This document shows positions 1-5,940 of a stretch of DNA of 64,000 bases, piece by piece. The stretch spans positions 1-64,000 of the IMG/VR virus record IMGVR_UViG_3300032236_001850. One strand, 5' to 3'. The notes below the pieces were generated by a model, which did no database searches, was not told the origin of the DNA, and saw nothing but the letters and a program-made list of their open reading frames with translations. The first letter of the stretch is position 1, and each line of letters opens with the position of its first letter. A program made the translations under genes and the position numbers.

Positions 1-240
1 ATGAACCATTAGAACCTGAGGAACCATTAGAAGATACTGAACCATTGGAGCCATTAGAACCATTAGTACCTGAGGAATCTGATGAACCATTAGAACCTGA
101 GGAACCATTAGAAGATACTGAACTATTAGAACCTGAGGAACCATTAGAACCTGAGGAACCATTAGAAACTGAGGAACCATTAGAAGATACTGATCCATTA
201 GAACCTGAGGAACCATTAGAACCTGAGGAACCGGAACTTG
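1..240. repeat. Coding tandem repeat, 18-nt unit GAACCATTAGAACCTGAG with variants
   Basis: Directly visible; encodes SGSNGS on the minus strand. Confidence 0.95.
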
Positions 241-721
241 TAGAATTTGAGGAGGTATTTTGTTTATTTTCCTTTCTGTTATCTGTTGTCGTTGAGCTTT
301 GTACACTTCCTATTGAAGATAACATGTTTGTTGAACCTGAACTTTCGGATGCTGCTTTTTCTGCTATGCTTGAAGTAATGTCACTTATTGCAGATAATGA
401 ATTTATAACACTTATTAAAGAAATAGCACTATCCTGAGCTATACCAACTGCTGTTGGAAGACCTATAATGGATGAGCACGGATTATTGTTTCCAAATGAC
501 TGATAAACACCATTAGCCCATGAACTAAAAGCACCATTTGTAAAATCGCCGGGTTGAAATGTTTGTATTTGACCGTAATAAGTTACTGTTATACCGTTTG
601 CTGGTACCTGTATTGTTTTAGATGTCCCTGTACAAGGGTCATTATAGGAATAATCAAGCGTCTGCGAATAACAGGCGCTTGATATAAGAAGCAGTATAAT
701 AAGTAAAGCTCTAACATGCAT
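2..721 (-). CDS. Secreted Ser/Gly/Asn-repeat protein (partial, runs off left edge; absent from ORF track)
   Basis: ATG at 721 overlaps the upstream TAA (TAATG). Manual translation MHVRALLIILLLISSACYSQTLDYSYNDPCTG... gives a signal peptide, then an open frame into (SSGSNG)n repeats with no stop seen to the window edge. Confidence 0.8.
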   Translation of the reverse strand, partial: MHVRALLIILLLISSACYSQTLDYSYNDPCTGTSKTIQVPANGITVTYYGQIQTFQPGDFTNGAFSSWANGVYQSFGNNNPCSSIIGLPTAVGIAQDSAISLISVINSLSAISDITSSIAEKAASESSGSTNMLSSIGSVQSSTTTDNRKENKQNTSSNSTSSGSSGSNGSSGSNGSVSSNGSSVSNGSSGSNGSSGSNSSVSSNGSSGSNGSSDSSGTNGSNGSNGSVSSNGSSGSNGS

Positions 722-1437
722 TACGATTTAAAGATTCCTTTTTTAATCATTCTAGCAACTATTCTGGAAGAAGCAGTTTCTAGTGATTTTTTTGTTGTTA
801 TACCTATTGTTGATTGGTTAAATTTAACCTCACTGTCGTCAACTCCATCCAGTATTGAAGCTGTTTTTATTGTTTTAGCCTCACCCAAACCAGATCCAAC
901 TAAAACCTCGTTGGTTTCTGCATCAACAAACTTAACCTGTAGACCAAGTCTTGTTACTTGTGTTGTTTTAGATTCGCCATTCACCTTTAATACTTCATCC
1001 TCCGAAACTGAGAAATCATAAACCTCTATATAAACAAAGTATTTAGCAAGTTTAATCTTTCCCTTACCGTCCAATTTGTTTTCAGTAAAACCTTTTGCTG
1101 AAGCTTTGAATTGGGAAATCATTCTTTCCTTAATTTCAAGTTTATCCTCAGTGAAAACAAATCTATTTGTCATCTCAAGAAATTCCAAAACTATATTGGT
1201 AACACCCAGACCAACTCTTTTATCCTTAAGCTCTGGATACATTTCATAAAGTTCCTCGTTTATACCAACTTTCAAAAGTTGAATTGGAACCTTTATCGTG
1301 TCATTATAGTCGGAAACTAAATCTATCGACTGTGTTTTTTCGAATGAAGCTTGATAGGTTTCTGTCTTAACAGAGCCTATTTGTGCCTTACTTGTTAAAG
1401 CAAATAAGACACAAATTATAATAAGCGCTCTTCTCAT
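721..1437 (-). CDS. CsgG/HfaB-like secreted protein
   Basis: Signal peptide; GLGVTNIVLEFL..RFVFTE and VTRLGLQVKFVDAETNEV..GSGLGEA resemble the CsgG/TolB-N-like fold family. Confidence 0.55.
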   Translation of the reverse strand: MRRALIIICVLFALTSKAQIGSVKTETYQASFEKTQSIDLVSDYNDTIKVPIQLLKVGINEELYEMYPELKDKRVGLGVTNIVLEFLEMTNRFVFTEDKLEIKERMISQFKASAKGFTENKLDGKGKIKLAKYFVYIEVYDFSVSEDEVLKVNGESKTTQVTRLGLQVKFVDAETNEVLVGSGLGEAKTIKTASILDGVDDSEVKFNQSTIGITTKKSLETASSRIVARMIKKGIFKS

Positions 1438-1441
1438 TTTA

Positions 1442-1789
1442 TTATTTTTGACCAGTTACATCAGATAGAGAAACTCCATCCTCTTCGTCAACTTTTTGGA
1501 TAAGCATTTTATCTCTGTCTTCAGAGTTAAACCAGTAATCAACAACTTTGTTTAAATTACCAACAAATGCACCTAGAAGGATAAGTAGCATTTCTTTCCA
1601 ATCCTCACCGATCGGCACACCGAAAAATACACCTGAGTTAATACCAAGTATAATTAATGTGAATAAACCCAATACGATTGCAGTTATTCTCCAACGATTG
1701 TTTTGCATCTCTTGAAGCATGTAGTAAAATCTGTTGTTAGCTTCAACAGGCTCTGGCTTTTTAGCCCCTAATAATTCTTTGATTTTCAT
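1442..1789 (-). CDS. Two-TM membrane protein (holin-like?)
   Basis: Start reassigned to MKIKELL (1789); two hydrophobic helices ending LLGAFVGNLNKVVDYWFNS. Confidence 0.6.
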   Translation of the reverse strand: MKIKELLGAKKPEPVEANNRFYYMLQEMQNNRWRITAIVLGLFTLIILGINSGVFFGVPIGEDWKEMLLILLGAFVGNLNKVVDYWFNSEDRDKMLIQKVDEEDGVSLSDVTGQK

Positions 1790-1811
1790 GTTTTGTTTTG
1801 TTTTGTTTGTT

Positions 1812-2015
1812 TTATCTATGACCGTGGCTATGACCATAATTATGACCATAACCACCATAATAGTGTATTTGGTAATATGGCTTTGGATAATAATATCTAG
1901 GTCCATAATTTGTGTAAATAGGTCTAGGTTCTACATAATATGATGACGGTGTTAATTGAATACCGCACGAGCTCATACCTAGAGCAACAAGTAATACTAT
2001 TATCAATTTTCTCAT
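1812..2015 (-). CDS. Small Tyr/Pro/Gly/His-rich lipoprotein
   Basis: MRKLIIVLLVALGMSSC lipobox. Confidence 0.65.
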   Translation of the reverse strand: MRKLIIVLLVALGMSSCGIQLTPSSYYVEPRPIYTNYGPRYYYPKPYYQIHYYGGYGHNYGHSHGHR

Positions 2016-2017
2016 AA

Positions 2018-2350
2018 TTACCAAGGTGCGTCTTCTGACTCACTTTTCTTTTTCTCCTCCTTTGAAGCTGCTGGTTTCTCAACAGTTTTTTCTTTGATGA
2101 TGGTTGTTGTTCCACCAGCTTGTTGTTTTTGTTGATTAGTGTTATTGTTTGTTAAATTAACCACAACAGGAGCAGCTGGAGCAGCTTGTTCAGTTTTTGG
2201 TTTTTCCTCGTCATCTTTATGACCACCAAATAGTTGTGTTGATAACCAGATACCCCCACCACCGATAACGGTGGTAAGAGTTCCAATTATAGTTTTCTTT
2301 AATCCAGACCAGGTTCCATCTGATTCTGGTACATTTGATTCTTCTGACAT
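2018..2350 (-). CDS. Single-TM protein with low-complexity tail
   Basis: IIGTLTTVIGGGGIWL hydrophobic segment; part of the operon. Confidence 0.7.
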   Translation of the reverse strand: MSEESNVPESDGTWSGLKKTIIGTLTTVIGGGGIWLSTQLFGGHKDDEEKPKTEQAAPAAPVVVNLTNNNTNQQKQQAGGTTTIIKEKTVEKPAASKEEKKKSESEDAPW

Positions 2351-2358
2351 CTTAATTG

Positions 2359-4293
2359 TTATTTTTTTATAATTTTCTCAGCTTCGTTTTGACTTTTAGC
2401 TTGTAAATAAGCTACATATACTCCACTAGCGAAGCTTTGTAGGTCATAGCTATATGTATAGGTACCCGCTGGCATTTCTTTGTCTAAAATAACGCTTTTA
2501 ATAGCTCCGTTCATGTCAACCACACAAAGCTTAACTTTACTAGACTCTTTAACCTCAAATTCTATATTAACAAGATTTGTTGTAGGATTTGGGTAAACTT
2601 TCATTGTTTCTTTGGTTTCTACACCAGTAATAGATGAAGTTTTATAAACCATCAATATTCCATTAGTTGGAGTTATTGACATGTCTTTTGCATTCTGATC
2701 TCCTGAGAATTTTCTTGTAGTGTAAAGTGGTGAAGCACTCCAAGTATCCTGTGGTGTTTTAGCTATAAATCTAAGGGTAAAAACATTATAATTATCAGGA
2801 AGCGAGTAGCTCTTATCAGCTGATGGATCATAACCACCCCATTCTATCTCTCCGTTAGTTGGATTTAGAAAAGAAAGCCAGAACATTGATTTTTCTGAAT
2901 TTTTTATGTCTTTAAATTCCAATAGGTTTTGATCATAAATCATACCAAATTGTAATGCAGTAATAGATTCACCTGCAGTTTTAAGTGTAACCGGGATCTC
3001 AACTAAATTACCTTCATTAACTGAAATACTAGGTACATTAAGTTCCATAGTTGAAGTTGGAAAATCGTAACTTACTTGTGTGTCTATAACATTTTGAGTA
3101 GCTGCTGGCATACCTGGAGCAGGTACAGCAGAAACTGTGATTGGTGTCATACGAGCCATGTGGTAACCTGTACCATTTGCATCACCAGTAACCATTACAT
3201 AATAAACAGAAGGAGCTTGGGCTGCGTCAGTTATAGGAATGTAAAAATCTGTTTGTCCTGGTATTGTTGATGTGTAGTTAGTTGTAGGTGAACCTGTTAT
3301 GGTTGCATACTCTGCTGCAGTAAAGAATTTGATATCAGCTACAGCATTAGGCCAAGTTGTGAATCTACCAGCAATTCTACCAAATACACCGTAAGCATCG
3401 GTAATTGTTACGTTATTAGAACCATTTACATCAGCTGCGTAAAATTGAAATCCTGATGGTGTTCCATTTCCAAGAACCCATTGGTTAATAAGTTCAGCAT
3501 CAGTTGTTGTTATAACGTTACCTGGAGTCATTGTGCTTCCTTTAACTGCTATACGTACATCATAATAAGTTAAATCTATAGGCTCAGTGAATTGGAAGTG
3601 TCCATTTGCATCTGTAGTGTATGAATTATGTATAGTCCAGTTTGATGTTGTTTTAACTTTCTTTTCAAGATTAAATGGTAAGTTCTTAGCTGGTGTTCCA
3701 GTTACGTTAGTAAAATCACCACTATAAGTAAGATTTTGGTTAAGCCAAGCACCACCATATGAATGTAAAGTCATAGCAACGTCTAAACCTGGTTGGTTCG
3801 ATGCAAGATACGGGAAAGAAGGTTGAGAAGCAAGCGGTACCCATGTTAAGTTTCCTATCGAAGTTAAAGAATAGAAAGTAGCAGCAGGTGCGTGCTGGAA
3901 AGTAAGTTCAAATAATTCACCCTGTGGTAAACTGTAATTTGTATCAGTACCAGTATAAACTAGTGTGATTGTAACGTAACCTTGTGACGGTTGATCGATA
4001 AATTGTAATGCTAAATTAGTTGTTGATCCAACTATTGCAGGAGAACATCCTACGAAAGCAGTTTTATCATAGAATAATCTAAACTGTAAACCAGTAACTT
4101 TTTCTGCATTTGTTGATGTGTTACTAAATGTTAATCTAGCTTTAGAAACACCAGCAGTAGATGTACCAATGGTGTAATTCTGTGCAAGTATCGTGTAGAT
4201 ACCATTCCCAGGTGCTGCCGGTACAGTTTGTGAAAATCCTAAAAAGGAAGCACAAAGAAAAGCAGCGATTAAAAAAATCTTCAATTTGTTCAT
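2359..4293 (-). CDS. T9SS cargo protein: signal peptide, cohesin-like, dockerin-like, cohesin-like, type A CTD
   Basis: CTD KVYPNPTTNLVNIEF...SGVYVAYL...EKIIKK; dockerin NVITTTDAELINQWVLG...AADVNGSNNVTITD; cohesin VEIPVTL..ITALQFGMIYDQNLLEF and VTGLQFRLFYDKTAF. Confidence 0.8.
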   Translation of the reverse strand: MNKLKIFLIAAFLCASFLGFSQTVPAAPGNGIYTILAQNYTIGTSTAGVSKARLTFSNTSTNAEKVTGLQFRLFYDKTAFVGCSPAIVGSTTNLALQFIDQPSQGYVTITLVYTGTDTNYSLPQGELFELTFQHAPAATFYSLTSIGNLTWVPLASQPSFPYLASNQPGLDVAMTLHSYGGAWLNQNLTYSGDFTNVTGTPAKNLPFNLEKKVKTTSNWTIHNSYTTDANGHFQFTEPIDLTYYDVRIAVKGSTMTPGNVITTTDAELINQWVLGNGTPSGFQFYAADVNGSNNVTITDAYGVFGRIAGRFTTWPNAVADIKFFTAAEYATITGSPTTNYTSTIPGQTDFYIPITDAAQAPSVYYVMVTGDANGTGYHMARMTPITVSAVPAPGMPAATQNVIDTQVSYDFPTSTMELNVPSISVNEGNLVEIPVTLKTAGESITALQFGMIYDQNLLEFKDIKNSEKSMFWLSFLNPTNGEIEWGGYDPSADKSYSLPDNYNVFTLRFIAKTPQDTWSASPLYTTRKFSGDQNAKDMSITPTNGILMVYKTSSITGVETKETMKVYPNPTTNLVNIEFEVKESSKVKLCVVDMNGAIKSVILDKEMPAGTYTYSYDLQSFASGVYVAYLQAKSQNEAEKIIKK

Positions 4294-4318: not shown

Positions 4319-5140
4319 TTATTTTAGAAGAGTATAGTACTCCTTAAAATGCTTAATTCTATCTGGTAGACCGATAGTACCACCATTTACTTTTTTAGTT
4401 ACTGCAGTAACTGTTGCATCATCTGCTCCTTTGTCACATATAGGCCAAAGACCATTTGAATTAAAGAAGAAAGCTGCAGAAGCTAAAGGATATTTAGTTG
4501 CAACTAAATCTGGGTTAGCCACGATATCCTCGGTTACCAATTTATCAAAAGAAGCATAATTCGATTTACCCGTTAATTGAATATAACCTCTTCCTCTAAA
4601 TTTAAAGCCTTCACCTGAAGCTTCATCGCCATTACCCATTCTATTAGAATAAACTTTGTTTGCAATTTTTTCCTTGTTTCTGTCGTATGGTTTTGCAGAT
4701 TCAAGGGTTGGGAAATACTTTTTGAATGTTGTATTCAATCCCGCTGCTCCATAGTTTAAATTCTCATAAACTGCTTTGAAACCTCCACTCTCGTGTCCAC
4801 ATTGTGATAGGAAGTGTGCCAATCTTAATGGTGTTGTGATATTGAAGGTTTTTGCAGTGTCAGGAATCTGTGCGATCACCTCTGCAGGTACGTGCCCTTT
4901 TAGAGCATCAAGTTTAAATGGACTAGCTGGTATGGTAGCAGCGGATGTTGTATTATCAGCACTGAACATTTTGTTCCATGTACCATCACCAACTATACCA
5001 TCAGCGGTTAATCCATTAGCAGCTTGCCATGCTTTTACGGCCTTTTCCGTACCCGGACCGAAAGCACCATCTGCTGCTAAACCTAGTTTACTTTGGAGTT
5101 TTTTTACATCATCTCCACTTGATCCAACTTTTAAAATCAT
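4319..5140 (-). CDS. Endolysin: peptidoglycan-binding domain + GH19 lysozyme-like domain
   Basis: LKVGSSGDDVKKLQSKLG..ADGAFGPGT (PG_binding_1); RLAHFLSQCGHESGGF and FRGRGYIQLTGKSNY (GH19). Confidence 0.92.
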   Translation of the reverse strand: MILKVGSSGDDVKKLQSKLGLAADGAFGPGTEKAVKAWQAANGLTADGIVGDGTWNKMFSADNTTSAATIPASPFKLDALKGHVPAEVIAQIPDTAKTFNITTPLRLAHFLSQCGHESGGFKAVYENLNYGAAGLNTTFKKYFPTLESAKPYDRNKEKIANKVYSNRMGNGDEASGEGFKFRGRGYIQLTGKSNYASFDKLVTEDIVANPDLVATKYPLASAAFFFNSNGLWPICDKGADDATVTAVTKKVNGGTIGLPDRIKHFKEYYTLLK

Positions 5141-5256: not shown

Positions 5257-5940
5257 ATGAAATATATTTCTATAGATGTGGAAACCAGTGGGTTAGATCC
5301 AGAATCAAATCAAGTTTTATCAATAGGAGCGGTAATTGAGGACACAAATAACCCTTTGCCCTTTGAAGAATGTCCAAAATTTCATGGTGCAATCAAGCAC
5401 GAGGATATAACTGGATCACTCTTTGCAATAAATCTAAATCGTGAGCTGATAGAGACTATAGTTTCTTATCAGACATGTAACAACGACGACGAGAGGAAAG
5501 ACGTCGAGAAAGCATCAGGAATGAAGTTTTATCATAAGGATGATATAGTTGAAGCTTTTTATCATTTTCTTTATCTTAATGGTATGGTTAATGTTGATCC
5601 CGATATGAACCTTCTGGAGAGAGTGATGAAACTAAATGACGATGGGAAATCTGTTCCTGTACTTACCTCCAGAATAAAACCCACCCACATAACAGTGGCT
5701 GGTAAGAATTTTGCTACCTTTGATAAACATTTTCTGGAGAGATTACCTAGATGGAAACAGGTAATTAGAATCAAACAAAGAATACTAGATCCTGCCATTT
5801 TGTATATTGATTGGAAAAATGATACTAGTCTTCCTTCACTGGGACAATGTAAAGAAAGAGCAGGAATTCACGGTATCGTGACTCACAATGCCTTGGAGGA
5901 CGCATGGGATGTTGTTGAATTATTAAGAAAAAAATACTAA
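5257..5940 (+). CDS. DEDDh 3'-5' exonuclease (DnaQ-like)
   Basis: IDVETSG, GKNFATFD, HNALEDA motifs. Confidence 0.85.
   Translation: MKYISIDVETSGLDPESNQVLSIGAVIEDTNNPLPFEECPKFHGAIKHEDITGSLFAINLNRELIETIVSYQTCNNDDERKDVEKASGMKFYHKDDIVEAFYHFLYLNGMVNVDPDMNLLERVMKLNDDGKSVPVLTSRIKPTHITVAGKNFATFDKHFLERLPRWKQVIRIKQRILDPAILYIDWKNDTSLPSLGQCKERAGIHGIVTHNALEDAWDVVELLRKKY

What the first reader, a model, noticed from the sequence alone, without database searches (positions are those of the whole stretch)
2..1437. CsgG-like protein translationally coupled to a hidden secreted (SGSNGS)n protein
Seen: the ORF track shows only a plus-strand EPLEPE shadow. The real gene starts at 721 on the minus strand (TAATG overlap with the CsgG-like gene), has a signal peptide and runs into Ser/Gly/Asn hexapeptide repeats. 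Known: CsgG forms the outer-membrane channel for curli, whose subunits are G/S/N/Q-rich. Inference: a phage-borne export channel plus a low-complexity, possibly amyloid-like or linker-rich cargo that coats the infected cell. The repeats are not canonical curlin repeats, and this CsgG-like protein has an SPI signal rather than a lipobox.
Basis: partly seen in the sequence, partly recalled or inferred. Interest (0 to 1): 0.62.

Follow-up and report, generated by a model that had tools for sequence, protein, structure and literature searches.

The report
Phage CsgG-fold protein plus tethered barrel
A huge phage of Bacteroidota carries a secreted, anchor-less relative of the curli channel CsgG, followed directly by an outer-membrane beta-barrel protein with a long floppy Ser/Gly/Asn spacer; the repeat is a variable linker, not an amyloid cargo.

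Summary
Window 721..1437 (-) encodes a 238-aa secreted protein. It has no Pfam hit itself. Its distant relatives match Pfam CsgG or LpoB, and its AlphaFold model is closest to CsgG (Z 13). It has no lipobox, no aromatic or hydrophobic hairpins, and no curli partners in the genome.

The next gene starts at 721 (TAATG overlap). It has a signal peptide and runs into GSSGSN/GSVSSN repeats. It continues across the circular junction of this 434-kb phage record to a 594-aa product: signal peptide, small two-Cys domain, low-complexity spacer, and a C-terminal barrel like that of an autotransporter. In 49 distinct orthologues the spacer is 85-405 aa with no conserved sequence. A marine orthologue has almost none.

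The gene pair is syntenic in 67 of 68 related viral loci. It sits in an operon of exported proteins: a T9SS cargo, a lectin and a second, small CsgG-like paralogue. Bacterial relatives form a similar trio: two CsgG-like genes plus an OMP-like gene.

Most likely the CsgG-fold protein is a periplasmic accessory or ring for an outer-membrane barrel, as in PelC/PelB or LptE/LptD. The operon probably remodels the infected cell's envelope. The function is inferred, not shown.

The parts
721..1437 (-). Gene A: 238-aa secreted CsgG/LpoB-superfamily protein (P0001); stop TAA at 723..721
   Evidence: ORF. No Pfam, NCBIfam or PHROG hit itself, but 21 of 37 relatives hit PF03783. AF2 pLDDT 79; best PDB matches are CsgG.
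1384..1437 (-). Signal peptide of gene A (residues 1-18, cleavage A18|Q19, SPI type, no lipobox)
   Evidence: Sequence. A18 and Q19 are invariant in close homologues. Distant relatives have ...GC lipoboxes instead.
1..721 (-). Gene B, 5' part (residues 1-240 of 594). It continues at the other end of the circular record (genome 434439 down to 433376, outside the window).
   Evidence: Orthologues P0124-P0126 and P0398.
665..721 (-). Signal peptide of gene B (residues 1-19, ...ACYS|Q)
   Evidence: Sequence. Q20 is invariant in orthologues.
377..664 (-). Gene B conserved N-terminal domain (residues ~20-115) with two invariant Cys (C30, C82)
   Evidence: Alignment A4. BLASTP to the marine orthologue gives E 2e-8. 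No family or fold match was found.
1..271 (-). Start of the low-complexity spacer (residues ~151-345 of gene B: S 44%, G 23%, N 19%; units GSSGSN/GSVSSN); the 18/36-nt tandem repeat covers window 2..232
   Evidence: The Collagen and tail-fibre profile hits are compositional. The spacer is hypervariable in orthologues.
1442..1789 (-). Upstream operon gene: conserved ~115-aa protein with two hydrophobic segments (probable true start M40 of the 154-aa ORF 1442..1906)
   Evidence: Orthologues start at the equivalent position; 76-84% identity in related loci.
2018..2350 (-). Upstream operon gene: 110-aa protein with one N-terminal hydrophobic segment
   Evidence: ORF; syntenic in related loci.
2359..4293 (-). 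Upstream operon gene: secreted 644-aa T9SS cargo (Cohesin, Dockerin_1, Por_Secre_tail CTD)
   Evidence: Pfam. It lies upstream of the CsgG-like gene in freshwater and marine relatives.

Best explanation
These are two tightly coupled genes of a conserved operon of exported envelope proteins in a huge (434-kb) phage of Bacteroidota. Gene A is exported by Sec and cut by signal peptidase I. It has the CsgG fold but has lost the lipid anchor, and the hairpins that span the membrane in CsgG are polar here. Gene B is an outer-membrane protein. Its C-terminal ~215 residues form a barrel like that of an autotransporter. A small disulfide-type N-terminal domain hangs on a long, flexible, fast-evolving Ser/Gly/Asn/Thr/Gln spacer. 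I propose that gene A forms a periplasmic ring or accessory at the inner face of the outer membrane. There it would serve a barrel partner (gene B) in the way PelC serves PelB or LptE serves LptD, rather than acting as a curli-type pore. I further propose that the whole operon (T9SS cargo with cohesin/dockerin, lectin/LamG protein, second mini CsgG-like paralogue) redecorates the infected cell's surface. Shown: fold and superfamily of A; domain architecture of B; synteny and coupling; spacer variability; the matching gene trio in bacteria. Inferred: localisation, oligomer state, the A-B contact, which side of the membrane the N-domain faces, and the biological purpose.
For: Gene A belongs to the CsgG superfamily: 21 of 37 relatives hit PF03783 and 8 hit LpoB; the profile hits E. 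coli CsgG at E 0.003; the AF2 model (pLDDT 79) gives CsgG Z 12-13 with 175-203 residues aligned, followed by LptE-like Z 10, PelC 9.6 and LptE 8.5; the nearest named Atlas clusters are CsgG/HfaB. There is no lipobox. The hairpins carry 6-7 charged and 0 aromatic residues, against 3-4 aromatics in E. coli CsgG. Gene B's barrel: the Atlas model of residues 377-594 matches autotransporter (TM 0.84), TonB-receptor barrel (0.81) and Phenol_MetA_deg (0.77) clusters. The marine orthologue ends in ...GGRVFF. Spacer: 49 distinct versions of 85-405 aa, always in frame. Synteny: N-domain and barrel lie downstream in 67 of 68 viral loci, directly adjacent in 62; the junction spacing is -3..+2 nt in 16 of 18 distinct contexts; the same module occurs in marine phage contigs at 42% identity. 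A second CsgG-like paralogue sits in the operon (hhalign probability 90.7%, E 1.2e-6). Bacterial relatives have an adjacent second paralogue in 24 of 26 loci and a ~400-aa secreted protein with an OMP-type C-terminus in 20 of 26. Precedents: the PelBC and LptDE structures appear among the fold matches; the PelC ring on the PelB barrel is described in PMC12141448. Bacteroidota host: a T9SS CTD cargo; an A/S|Q signal cleavage site in all six exported proteins, which fits the Q-rule (PMC5837995); close homologues on contigs binned as Flavobacterium, Sediminibacterium and Bacteroidetes.
Against: No direct evidence for an A-B contact: the complex prediction scored 0.00, which is no verdict. The phage barrel and the bacterial OMP-like partners are not detectably homologous (hhalign E 0.14), so the parallel is one of architecture only. 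The barrel rests on a predicted Atlas model with modest overall confidence (pTM 0.45 for a fragment that includes the disordered spacer) and has no Pfam or PDB sequence match. In marine contigs two other genes separate A from the gene B orthologue. The most conserved motif of family A (YPELxDKRVGxG) aligns with the region around the CsgG Y-P motif. From memory, that region is the constriction loop, which would also fit a real pore. Gene A is more conserved (68-92%) than gene B (45-72%), so its main partner could be a host component instead.
Confidence: 0.45

Rival explanations
1. One reading: gene A is a curli-type outer-membrane channel, and the Ser/Gly/Asn repeat protein is its amyloid-like or coat-forming secreted cargo.
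For: CsgG is the best structural match, including two long beta-hairpins. The genes are tightly coupled. The repeat is rich in S, G and N.
Against: The 'cargo' carries its own conserved C-terminal membrane barrel. The repeat has no conserved sequence, varies from 85 to 405 aa and is almost absent in a marine orthologue. The genome has no Curlin_rpt, CsgE or CsgF. There is no lipid anchor, and the hairpins are charged and lack aromatics.
Confidence: 0.07
2. Gene A is a genuine CsgG-like oligomeric pore that exports something other than the repeat, for example the N-domain and spacer of gene B or the neighbouring lectin/LamG protein. It would be held at the membrane by a partner rather than by a lipid.
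For: Full-length fold match to CsgG, with hairpins at the same positions. The family's most conserved motif aligns with the CsgG Y-P loop region. Several secreted proteins without a recognisable route across the outer membrane sit in the operon.
Against: Neither face of either hairpin is hydrophobic; there are no aromatic girdle residues; hairpin 1 is about 5 residues shorter than in E. coli CsgG. The same domain is fused to Ser/Thr kinases and caspases in bacteria, which fits a soluble periplasmic module better.
Confidence: 0.18
3. The pair belongs to the lysis cassette and helps breach the outer membrane at the end of infection, in a spanin-like or disruptin-like role.
For: In this genome an endolysin (PG_binding_1 + GH19) lies 3 kb upstream on the same strand. 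Two small membrane proteins lie between it and gene A. There is a weak PHROG hit to an Rz-like spanin for the 154-aa ORF (E 0.011).
Against: In related phages the endolysin's position and strand vary while the CsgG-like/barrel block stays fixed. Lectin, LamG and cohesin/dockerin T9SS cargo neighbours suggest surface display, not lysis. Bacterial relatives form a chromosomal cassette with no lysis context.
Confidence: 0.1
4. Gene A acts alone on a conserved host envelope component, for example as an LpoB-like regulator of peptidoglycan synthesis or a TraT-like exclusion factor. Its adjacency to gene B would be only operon packing.
For: Gene A is the most conserved gene of the module: 68-92% identity, with more than 5,500 metagenomic homologues. 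8 of 37 relatives match LpoB. TraT (Z 8.1) and TolB-N (Z 6.9) share the fold.
Against: CsgG scores clearly above LpoB-like and TraT-like folds. Adjacency holds in 62 of 68 loci, with overlapping stop/start codons. A parallel trio exists in bacteria.
Confidence: 0.15

Closest known systems
CsgG (curli secretion channel, Pfam PF03783; PDB 4UV3, 4Q79, 6L7A)
   Same: Same superfamily through intermediate sequences. Same fold over ~175-200 residues, Z 12-13. Two long hairpins sit at the positions of the CsgG transmembrane hairpins. The Y-P loop motif is conserved.
   Different: No lipobox Cys. The hairpins are charged, lack aromatics and are shorter. No direct Pfam hit. No CsgE, CsgF or curlin in the genome. 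Encoded by a phage.
PelC-PelB and LptE-LptD (a CsgG/LptE-fold lipoprotein serving an outer-membrane beta-barrel)
   Same: Gene A shares the fold with PelC (Z 9.6) and LptE (Z 8.5). It is encoded next to a protein with a C-terminal barrel and an N-terminal non-barrel part, like PelB. The PelC ring sits on the PelB barrel (PMC12141448).
   Different: No sequence relation of gene B to PelB or LptD. No lipid anchor on gene A. No polysaccharide or LPS genes were seen beside it. The contact is not shown (one search gave no verdict).
Type Va autotransporters (Pfam PF03797 beta-domain)
   Same: Gene B has a signal peptide, an N-terminal 'passenger' and a C-terminal barrel. The barrel's predicted structure matches autotransporter barrel clusters at TM 0.81-0.84.
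   Different: No PF03797 sequence match. The passenger is a ~95-aa two-Cys domain plus a disordered spacer rather than a beta-helix. Its two Cys are 52 residues apart, which (from my own knowledge) classical autotransport tolerates poorly. The barrel is only ~215 aa.
Uncharacterised bacterial cassette: CsgG-like paralogue + CsgG-like lipoprotein + ~400-aa OMP-like protein (MAGs labelled Desulfobacterales, Desulfuromonadaceae, KSB1, Cloacimonadota and others)
   Same: Gene A's nearest cellular relatives, at 31-39% identity. Two paralogues plus a secreted protein with an OMP-type C-terminus lie side by side in 20-24 of 26 loci. The phage operon holds the same three kinds of gene.
   Different: The bacterial proteins keep the lipobox. 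Their OMP-like partner is not detectably homologous to the phage barrel and has no low-complexity spacer. My searches found no study of this cassette.

Membership tests
CsgG family / curli secretion channel | Sequence match to Pfam PF03783 above its cut-off | tested here: not met
   P0001 has no Pfam hit at E<=1, and the genome has no PF03783 match at E<=10. The link is only transitive: 21 of 37 relatives match (best 1.9e-17), and the profile hits PDB CsgG at E 0.003.
CsgG family / curli secretion channel | CsgG alpha/beta fold with two extended beta-hairpins | tested here: met
   AF2 model pLDDT 79, pTM 0.72, strands 133-150/155-172/178-194. Foldseek top hits are CsgG at E ~1e-7. VIA Z 12.3-13.0, rmsd 3.5-4.3 A, 173-203 residues aligned.
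CsgG family / curli secretion channel | N-terminal lipobox Cys (outer-membrane lipoprotein) | tested here: not met
   The signal ends ...LTSKA|QIGS. A18 and Q19 are invariant in the phage clade. Distant relatives carry ...GC.
CsgG family / curli secretion channel | Amphipathic transmembrane hairpins with aromatic girdle | tested here: not met
   Hairpin 1 has 6 charged and 0 aromatic residues in 20; hairpin 2 has 7 charged and 0 aromatic in 18. E. coli CsgG has 3 and 4 aromatics and a Gly-rich, longer hairpin 1. This is a sequence criterion only.
CsgG family / curli secretion channel | Partners CsgE/CsgF and a curlin-repeat substrate | tested here: not met
   No PF07012, PF10614 or PF10627 match in the 434-kb genome at E<=10, while the E. 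coli control rings.
CsgG family / curli secretion channel | Nonameric ring with a central constriction | not testable with these tools
The aligned Y-P loop motif is conserved, but no oligomer was modelled.
Curlin / functional amyloid (for gene B) | Conserved imperfect repeats of the curlin type, shared by orthologues | tested here: not met
   No Curlin_rpt match. The spacer sequence and composition differ between orthologues (N/Q/S/T, G/S, S/T/P and others), the length is 85-405 aa, and it is nearly absent in P0398.
Collagen-like / tail-fibre proteins (profile hits to gene B) | Uninterrupted Gly-X-Y triplets | tested here: not met
   The longest G-X-Y run is 5 triplets, with no Pro. The Collagen hit scores 28.6 bits against a 27.2 cut-off and, like the PHROG tail-fibre hits, covers only the low-complexity stretch.
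Type Va autotransporter (for gene B) | C-terminal 12-stranded translocator barrel (PF03797) | tested here: inconclusive
   No Pfam or PDB sequence match. The Atlas's own predicted model matches PF03797 clusters at TM 0.81-0.84, but also other barrels at 0.77-0.81. The strand number was not determined.
Type Va autotransporter (for gene B) | Passenger exported through or next to its own barrel to the cell surface | not testable with these tools
   Topology needs protease shaving or labelling. The widely spaced Cys pair (C30, C82) argues weakly for a periplasmic N-domain.

The most novel reading that the evidence does not exclude
The phage pair and the bacterial trio (two CsgG-fold proteins plus an outer-membrane barrel protein) represent one so-far undescribed kind of envelope machine. 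In it, a CsgG-fold ring without its own membrane pore docks under a barrel. Huge Bacteroidota phages have captured this machine, stripped its lipid anchor and fitted the barrel with a rapidly length-varying tether, in order to display or hold a small domain on infected cells.
Probability: 0.25. Interest if true: 0.65.

Novelty: new variant of a known kind. Interest (0 to 1): 0.42.

Why it matters
Phage genes that rebuild the host's outer membrane are little known outside lysis and a few exclusion lipoproteins. Here a very widespread gene pair (more than 5,500 metagenomic homologues of gene A, and 506 IMG/VR contigs) sits in a conserved block of exported proteins: a T9SS cargo, a lectin and barrel proteins. 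This suggests that huge freshwater and marine Bacteroidota phages redecorate the infected cell's surface. It also points to an unstudied bacterial cassette built around a CsgG-fold lipoprotein. And it gives a natural example of a CsgG fold that has lost both its lipid anchor and its membrane-compatible hairpins, which bears on how the CsgG, PelC and LptE folds diversified. For annotation, the lesson is practical. The JGI label 'CsgG secretion channel' on some homologues overstates what is known, and the collagen and tail-fibre hits on the neighbour are low-complexity artefacts.

Tried and rejected
(1) The first AF2 run, with 28 close homologues (80% identity or more), gave pLDDT 44.6 and was discarded. 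A diverse alignment from the representative search fixed this.

(2) Complex prediction of gene A against gene B's N-domain and barrel scored 0.00 and gave no verdict. It is not used for or against binding.

No reads were laid, so expression, environment and the true repeat number at the junction were not checked. I tried no other route.

(4) Hits to Collagen, Scl adhesins and tail fibres for gene B were rejected as compositional.

(5) The feature search of the Atlas with the N-domain scored 0.76, which is noise level.

(6) hhalign of the phage barrel against the bacterial OMP-like partner found only the last hairpin (E 0.14). Profiles of both against the PDB found nothing.

(7) My crude beta-amphipathicity scan of the barrel flagged only 5 segments. 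It was uninformative and is not used.

(8) I considered that gene B might be a SprF/PorP-like protein disulfide-linked to the gliding track (PMC12635249). I dropped the idea because SprF uses twin Cys in a C-terminal tail, and gene B has none.

(9) The search for related loci with the 37-sequence alignment failed for lack of a conserved stretch. It was repeated with 10 sequences.

(10) The 343-aa gene directly after the marine CsgG-like gene is unrelated to gene B. The true orthologue lies two genes further on.

(11) One script hit the time limit through a loop error and was rerun.
Full report
WHERE THE WINDOW LIES. The window is the first 64 kb of a 434,509-bp virus record whose two ends share 70 identical bases. 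I treated it as circular, with 434,439 unique bases. The finding sits at the very start of the record, so part of the second gene lies at the record's other end.

CHECK OF THE OBSERVATION. With open ends allowed, the ORF list shows three things:
- a minus-strand ORF at 721..1437 (238 aa, P0001);
- a minus-strand frame at 2..721 that runs off the window (240 aa, P0002);
- on the plus strand, only the 'EPLEPE' frame at 3..437.

The stop TAA of the first gene (723..721) shares its last A with the ATG of the second, giving the TAATG overlap. P0002 begins with a signal peptide (MHVRALLIILLLISSACYS|Q) and ends in GSSGSN/GSVSSN units. The DNA is an 18/36-nt tandem array over window 2..232 and genome 434216..434509.

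Joining the ends at the 70-bp overlap gives one uninterrupted 594-aa ORF that ends at genome 433376. P0003 covers residues 218-594. The overlap lies inside the repeat, so the exact number of units is not secure.

The minus strand is the coding strand. In 49 distinct orthologues the conserved N-terminal and C-terminal domains stay in one frame, without stops, across very different spacers.

GENE A (721..1437). P0001 has no match in Pfam, NCBIfam, PHROGs or PDB sequences.
- The word search found 5,588 homologues. The best 120 are 79-92% identical and 234-252 aa long, on contigs up to 411 kb. A few are labelled 'CsgG' by JGI.
- The family scans left the protein open, so I ran the representative search. 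It returned 230 cluster representatives, including full-length relatives at 23-50% identity.
- Most of these distant relatives carry a lipobox (...GC), whereas the phage clade has ...SKA|Q.
- Of 37 aligned members, 21 match Pfam CsgG (best 1.9e-17) and 8 match LpoB.
- The family profile finds E. coli CsgG in the PDB at E 0.003.

With this alignment AlphaFold gives pLDDT 79 and pTM 0.72.
- Foldseek's top hits are all CsgG, at E about 1e-7.
- The VIA re-alignment gives CsgG Z 12.3-13.0 over 173-203 residues. It is followed by an LptE-like protein (10.0), PelC (9.6), FlgT (8.9), LptE (8.5), TraT (8.1) and TolB-N (6.9).
- The nearest named ESM Atlas clusters are CsgG/HfaB.
- BFVD holds one uncultured-phage protein already named CsgG.

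So 'CsgG-like' is correct for fold and superfamily.

IS GENE A A CHANNEL? Three things speak against a curli-type pore.
- There is no lipid anchor.
- The two hairpins that are transmembrane in CsgG (P0001 143-162 and 188-205) contain 6 and 7 charged residues and no aromatic residue. The aligned E. coli hairpins have 3 and 4 aromatics and a longer, Gly-rich first hairpin.
- The genome has no match to Curlin_rpt, CsgF or CsgE, although the E. coli control rings.

In bacteria the same domain is also fused to Ser/Thr kinases and to caspase-like peptidases. This fits a soluble extracytoplasmic module.

Against my view, the family's most conserved motif (YPELxDKRVGxG) aligns with the Y-P loop region of CsgG. 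I recall that region as the channel constriction, so a ring with a central loop remains possible.

GENE B. Orthologues of 505-639 aa share three parts:
- a conserved N-terminal domain of about 95 aa with two invariant Cys;
- a conserved C-terminal domain of about 215 aa;
- a low-complexity stretch between them.

In this genome the middle stretch is 44% Ser, 23% Gly and 19% Asn. It has no Pro, and its longest Gly-X-Y run is five triplets. The Collagen, Scl-adhesin and tail-fibre profile hits are therefore compositional.

The Atlas holds its own model of P0003. Residues 160-377 of P0003 match autotransporter barrel clusters (TM 0.81-0.84), a TonB-receptor barrel (0.81) and Phenol_MetA_deg (0.77). 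By sequence features the nearest named clusters are Phage_OMP and KdgM porins. No Pfam or PDB sequence match exists. I therefore read the C-terminal domain as an outer-membrane barrel, on predicted-structure evidence only.

THE SPACER IS NOT A CONSERVED ELEMENT. Across 80 IMG/VR loci I found 49 distinct spacers of 85-405 aa (median 179). They are rich in S, G, N, T or Q in differing proportions and share no sequence.

In marine phage contigs the CsgG-like protein is 42% identical and keeps its lipobox. There the gene B orthologue (P0398, 305 aa) has the N-domain (E 2e-8), an 18-aa linker and a barrel ending ...GGRVFF. The hexapeptide repeats of this genome are therefore a lineage-specific, slippage-prone tether.

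CONTEXT. The minus-strand block reads as follows:
- endolysin (PG_binding_1 + GH19, 4319..5140);
- a 644-aa T9SS cargo with cohesin, dockerin and Por_Secre_tail (2359..4293);
- a 110-aa single-span protein (2018..2350);
- a conserved ~115-aa two-span protein (1442..1789);
- gene A;
- gene B;
- a 920-aa secreted legume-lectin/LamG protein;
- a 148-aa secreted protein;
- a 150-aa secreted protein.

The 148-aa protein is a second, shortened CsgG-like paralogue (hhalign probability 90.7%, E 1.2e-6).

Synteny is strong. In 67 of 68 viral loci with enough downstream sequence, the N-domain and barrel follow gene A, and in 62 they follow directly. The stop/start spacing is -3 to +2 nt in 16 of 18 distinct junctions. 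The cohesin cargo and the small membrane proteins are always upstream, while the endolysin moves about.

All six exported proteins have A|Q or S|Q cleavage sites. This fits the Bacteroidetes Q-rule (PMC5837995). Together with the T9SS tail, and with close homologues on contigs binned as Flavobacterium, Sediminibacterium and 'Bacteroidetes', it points to a Bacteroidota host.

BACTERIAL RELATIVES. Twenty-six loci come from MAGs labelled Desulfobacterales, Desulfuromonadaceae, KSB1, Cloacimonadota, Nitrospinota and others, and encode lipoproteins 31-39% identical to gene A.
- In 24 of them a second CsgG-like paralogue lies adjacent (hhalign E 1.4e-10 for one example).
- In 20 of them there is a ~340-415-aa secreted protein ending in an OMP-type motif such as ...IYKF or ...IYRY. 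It has only a weak OMP_b-brl hit.
- That protein is not detectably related to the phage barrel.

The parallel is therefore architectural: two CsgG-fold proteins plus an outer-membrane protein, in bacteria and in the phage. My literature searches found no description of either.

HOW IT MOST LIKELY WORKS. Gene A is exported and cut by signal peptidase I (sequence; inferred). It adopts the CsgG fold (predicted). Lacking an anchor and membrane-compatible hairpins, it most likely acts on the periplasmic side of the outer membrane. There it would be a ring or accessory for a barrel protein. Its fold relatives work this way: PelC rings the PelB barrel (PMC12141448), and LptE plugs LptD (the entries).

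Gene B is inserted into the outer membrane through its barrel and carries its N-domain on a flexible tether. I could not decide which side the N-domain faces.
- For surface display: the autotransporter-like barrel, the adhesive neighbours and the variable tether.
- For a periplasmic location: the widely spaced Cys pair and the PelB-like layout.

The A-B contact was tested by complex prediction, which gave no verdict. The operon's purpose, remodelling the infected cell's surface for adhesion or exclusion, is inference from the neighbours. I put 0.45 on this package. I give lower weights to a true pore (0.18), a host-directed solo role (0.15), a lysis role (0.10) and the curli-amyloid reading (0.07).

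NOVELTY AND SCORE. The parts are recognisable: a CsgG-superfamily fold and an autotransporter-like barrel. But the anchor-less phage form, the tethered barrel and the matching bacterial cassette are, as far as I could find, undescribed. I rate this a new variant of a known kind, with interest 0.42. It is widespread and conserved, but its function is unknown and the striking part of the original claim (amyloid cargo) falls.

LIMITS. No reads or expression data were obtained. The barrel and the ring are predictions. The repeat number at the record's junction is uncertain.

Noticed in passing
window 1812..2015 (-): A 67-aa ORF (MRKLIIVLLVALGMSSC|GIQ...) with a lipobox-like signal and a Tyr/Pro/Gly/His-rich body. 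It lies in the 228-nt gap between the 110-aa membrane gene and the probable true start (nt 1789) of the two-span gene. It has no homologue in 80 related viral loci. It could be a small outer-membrane lipoprotein of the o-spanin kind.
   Followed up: partly
window 2359..4293 (-): A phage-encoded type IX secretion cargo: signal peptide, Cohesin, Dockerin_1 and a Por_Secre_tail C-terminal sorting domain. It lies upstream of the CsgG-like gene in every related freshwater and marine locus examined.
   Followed up: partly
window 4319..5140 (-): An endolysin with PG_binding_1 and glycoside hydrolase 19 domains. Its position and strand relative to the CsgG-like block differ between related phages.
   Followed up: partly
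L011:6621-9380 (-) = genome 430617..433379, outside the window: A 920-aa secreted protein with a legume-lectin domain and a Laminin_G_3 domain. Its start overlaps gene B's stop by 4 nt.
   Followed up: partly
L011:6166-6609 (-) = genome 430162..430608, outside the window: A 148-aa secreted protein that is a shortened second CsgG-like paralogue. It lacks the segment matching P0001 residues ~95-132 (hhalign probability 90.7%). It is conserved downstream in most related loci.
   Followed up: yes
window 1..70 and genome 434440..434509: The record's 70-bp 'direct terminal repeat' lies inside the 18/36-nt tandem array of gene B. The assembly probably broke in the repeat, so the copy number is uncertain.
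   Followed up: partly
P0229, P0232, P0240 (caspase fusions); P0241, P0261 (kinase fusions): The same CsgG-like domain occurs at the N-terminus of Peptidase_C14 (caspase) proteins and at the C-terminus of Ser/Thr protein kinases.
   Followed up: no
L021-L046 (bacterial MAG loci): A conserved cassette: a CsgG-like paralogue, a CsgG-like lipoprotein and a ~400-aa secreted protein with an OMP-type C-terminus, in 20-24 of 26 loci. My searches found no literature on it.
   Followed up: partly
window 5257..5940 (+): A 227-aa ORF whose start (MKYISIDVETSGLDPE...) looks by eye like a DnaQ/DEDD-type 3'-5' exonuclease motif. It was not scanned.
   Followed up: no
L012:4050-4670 and L013:2321-2941: In the marine relatives an Endonuclease_NS gene is inserted between the two small membrane-protein genes of the module.
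   Followed up: no
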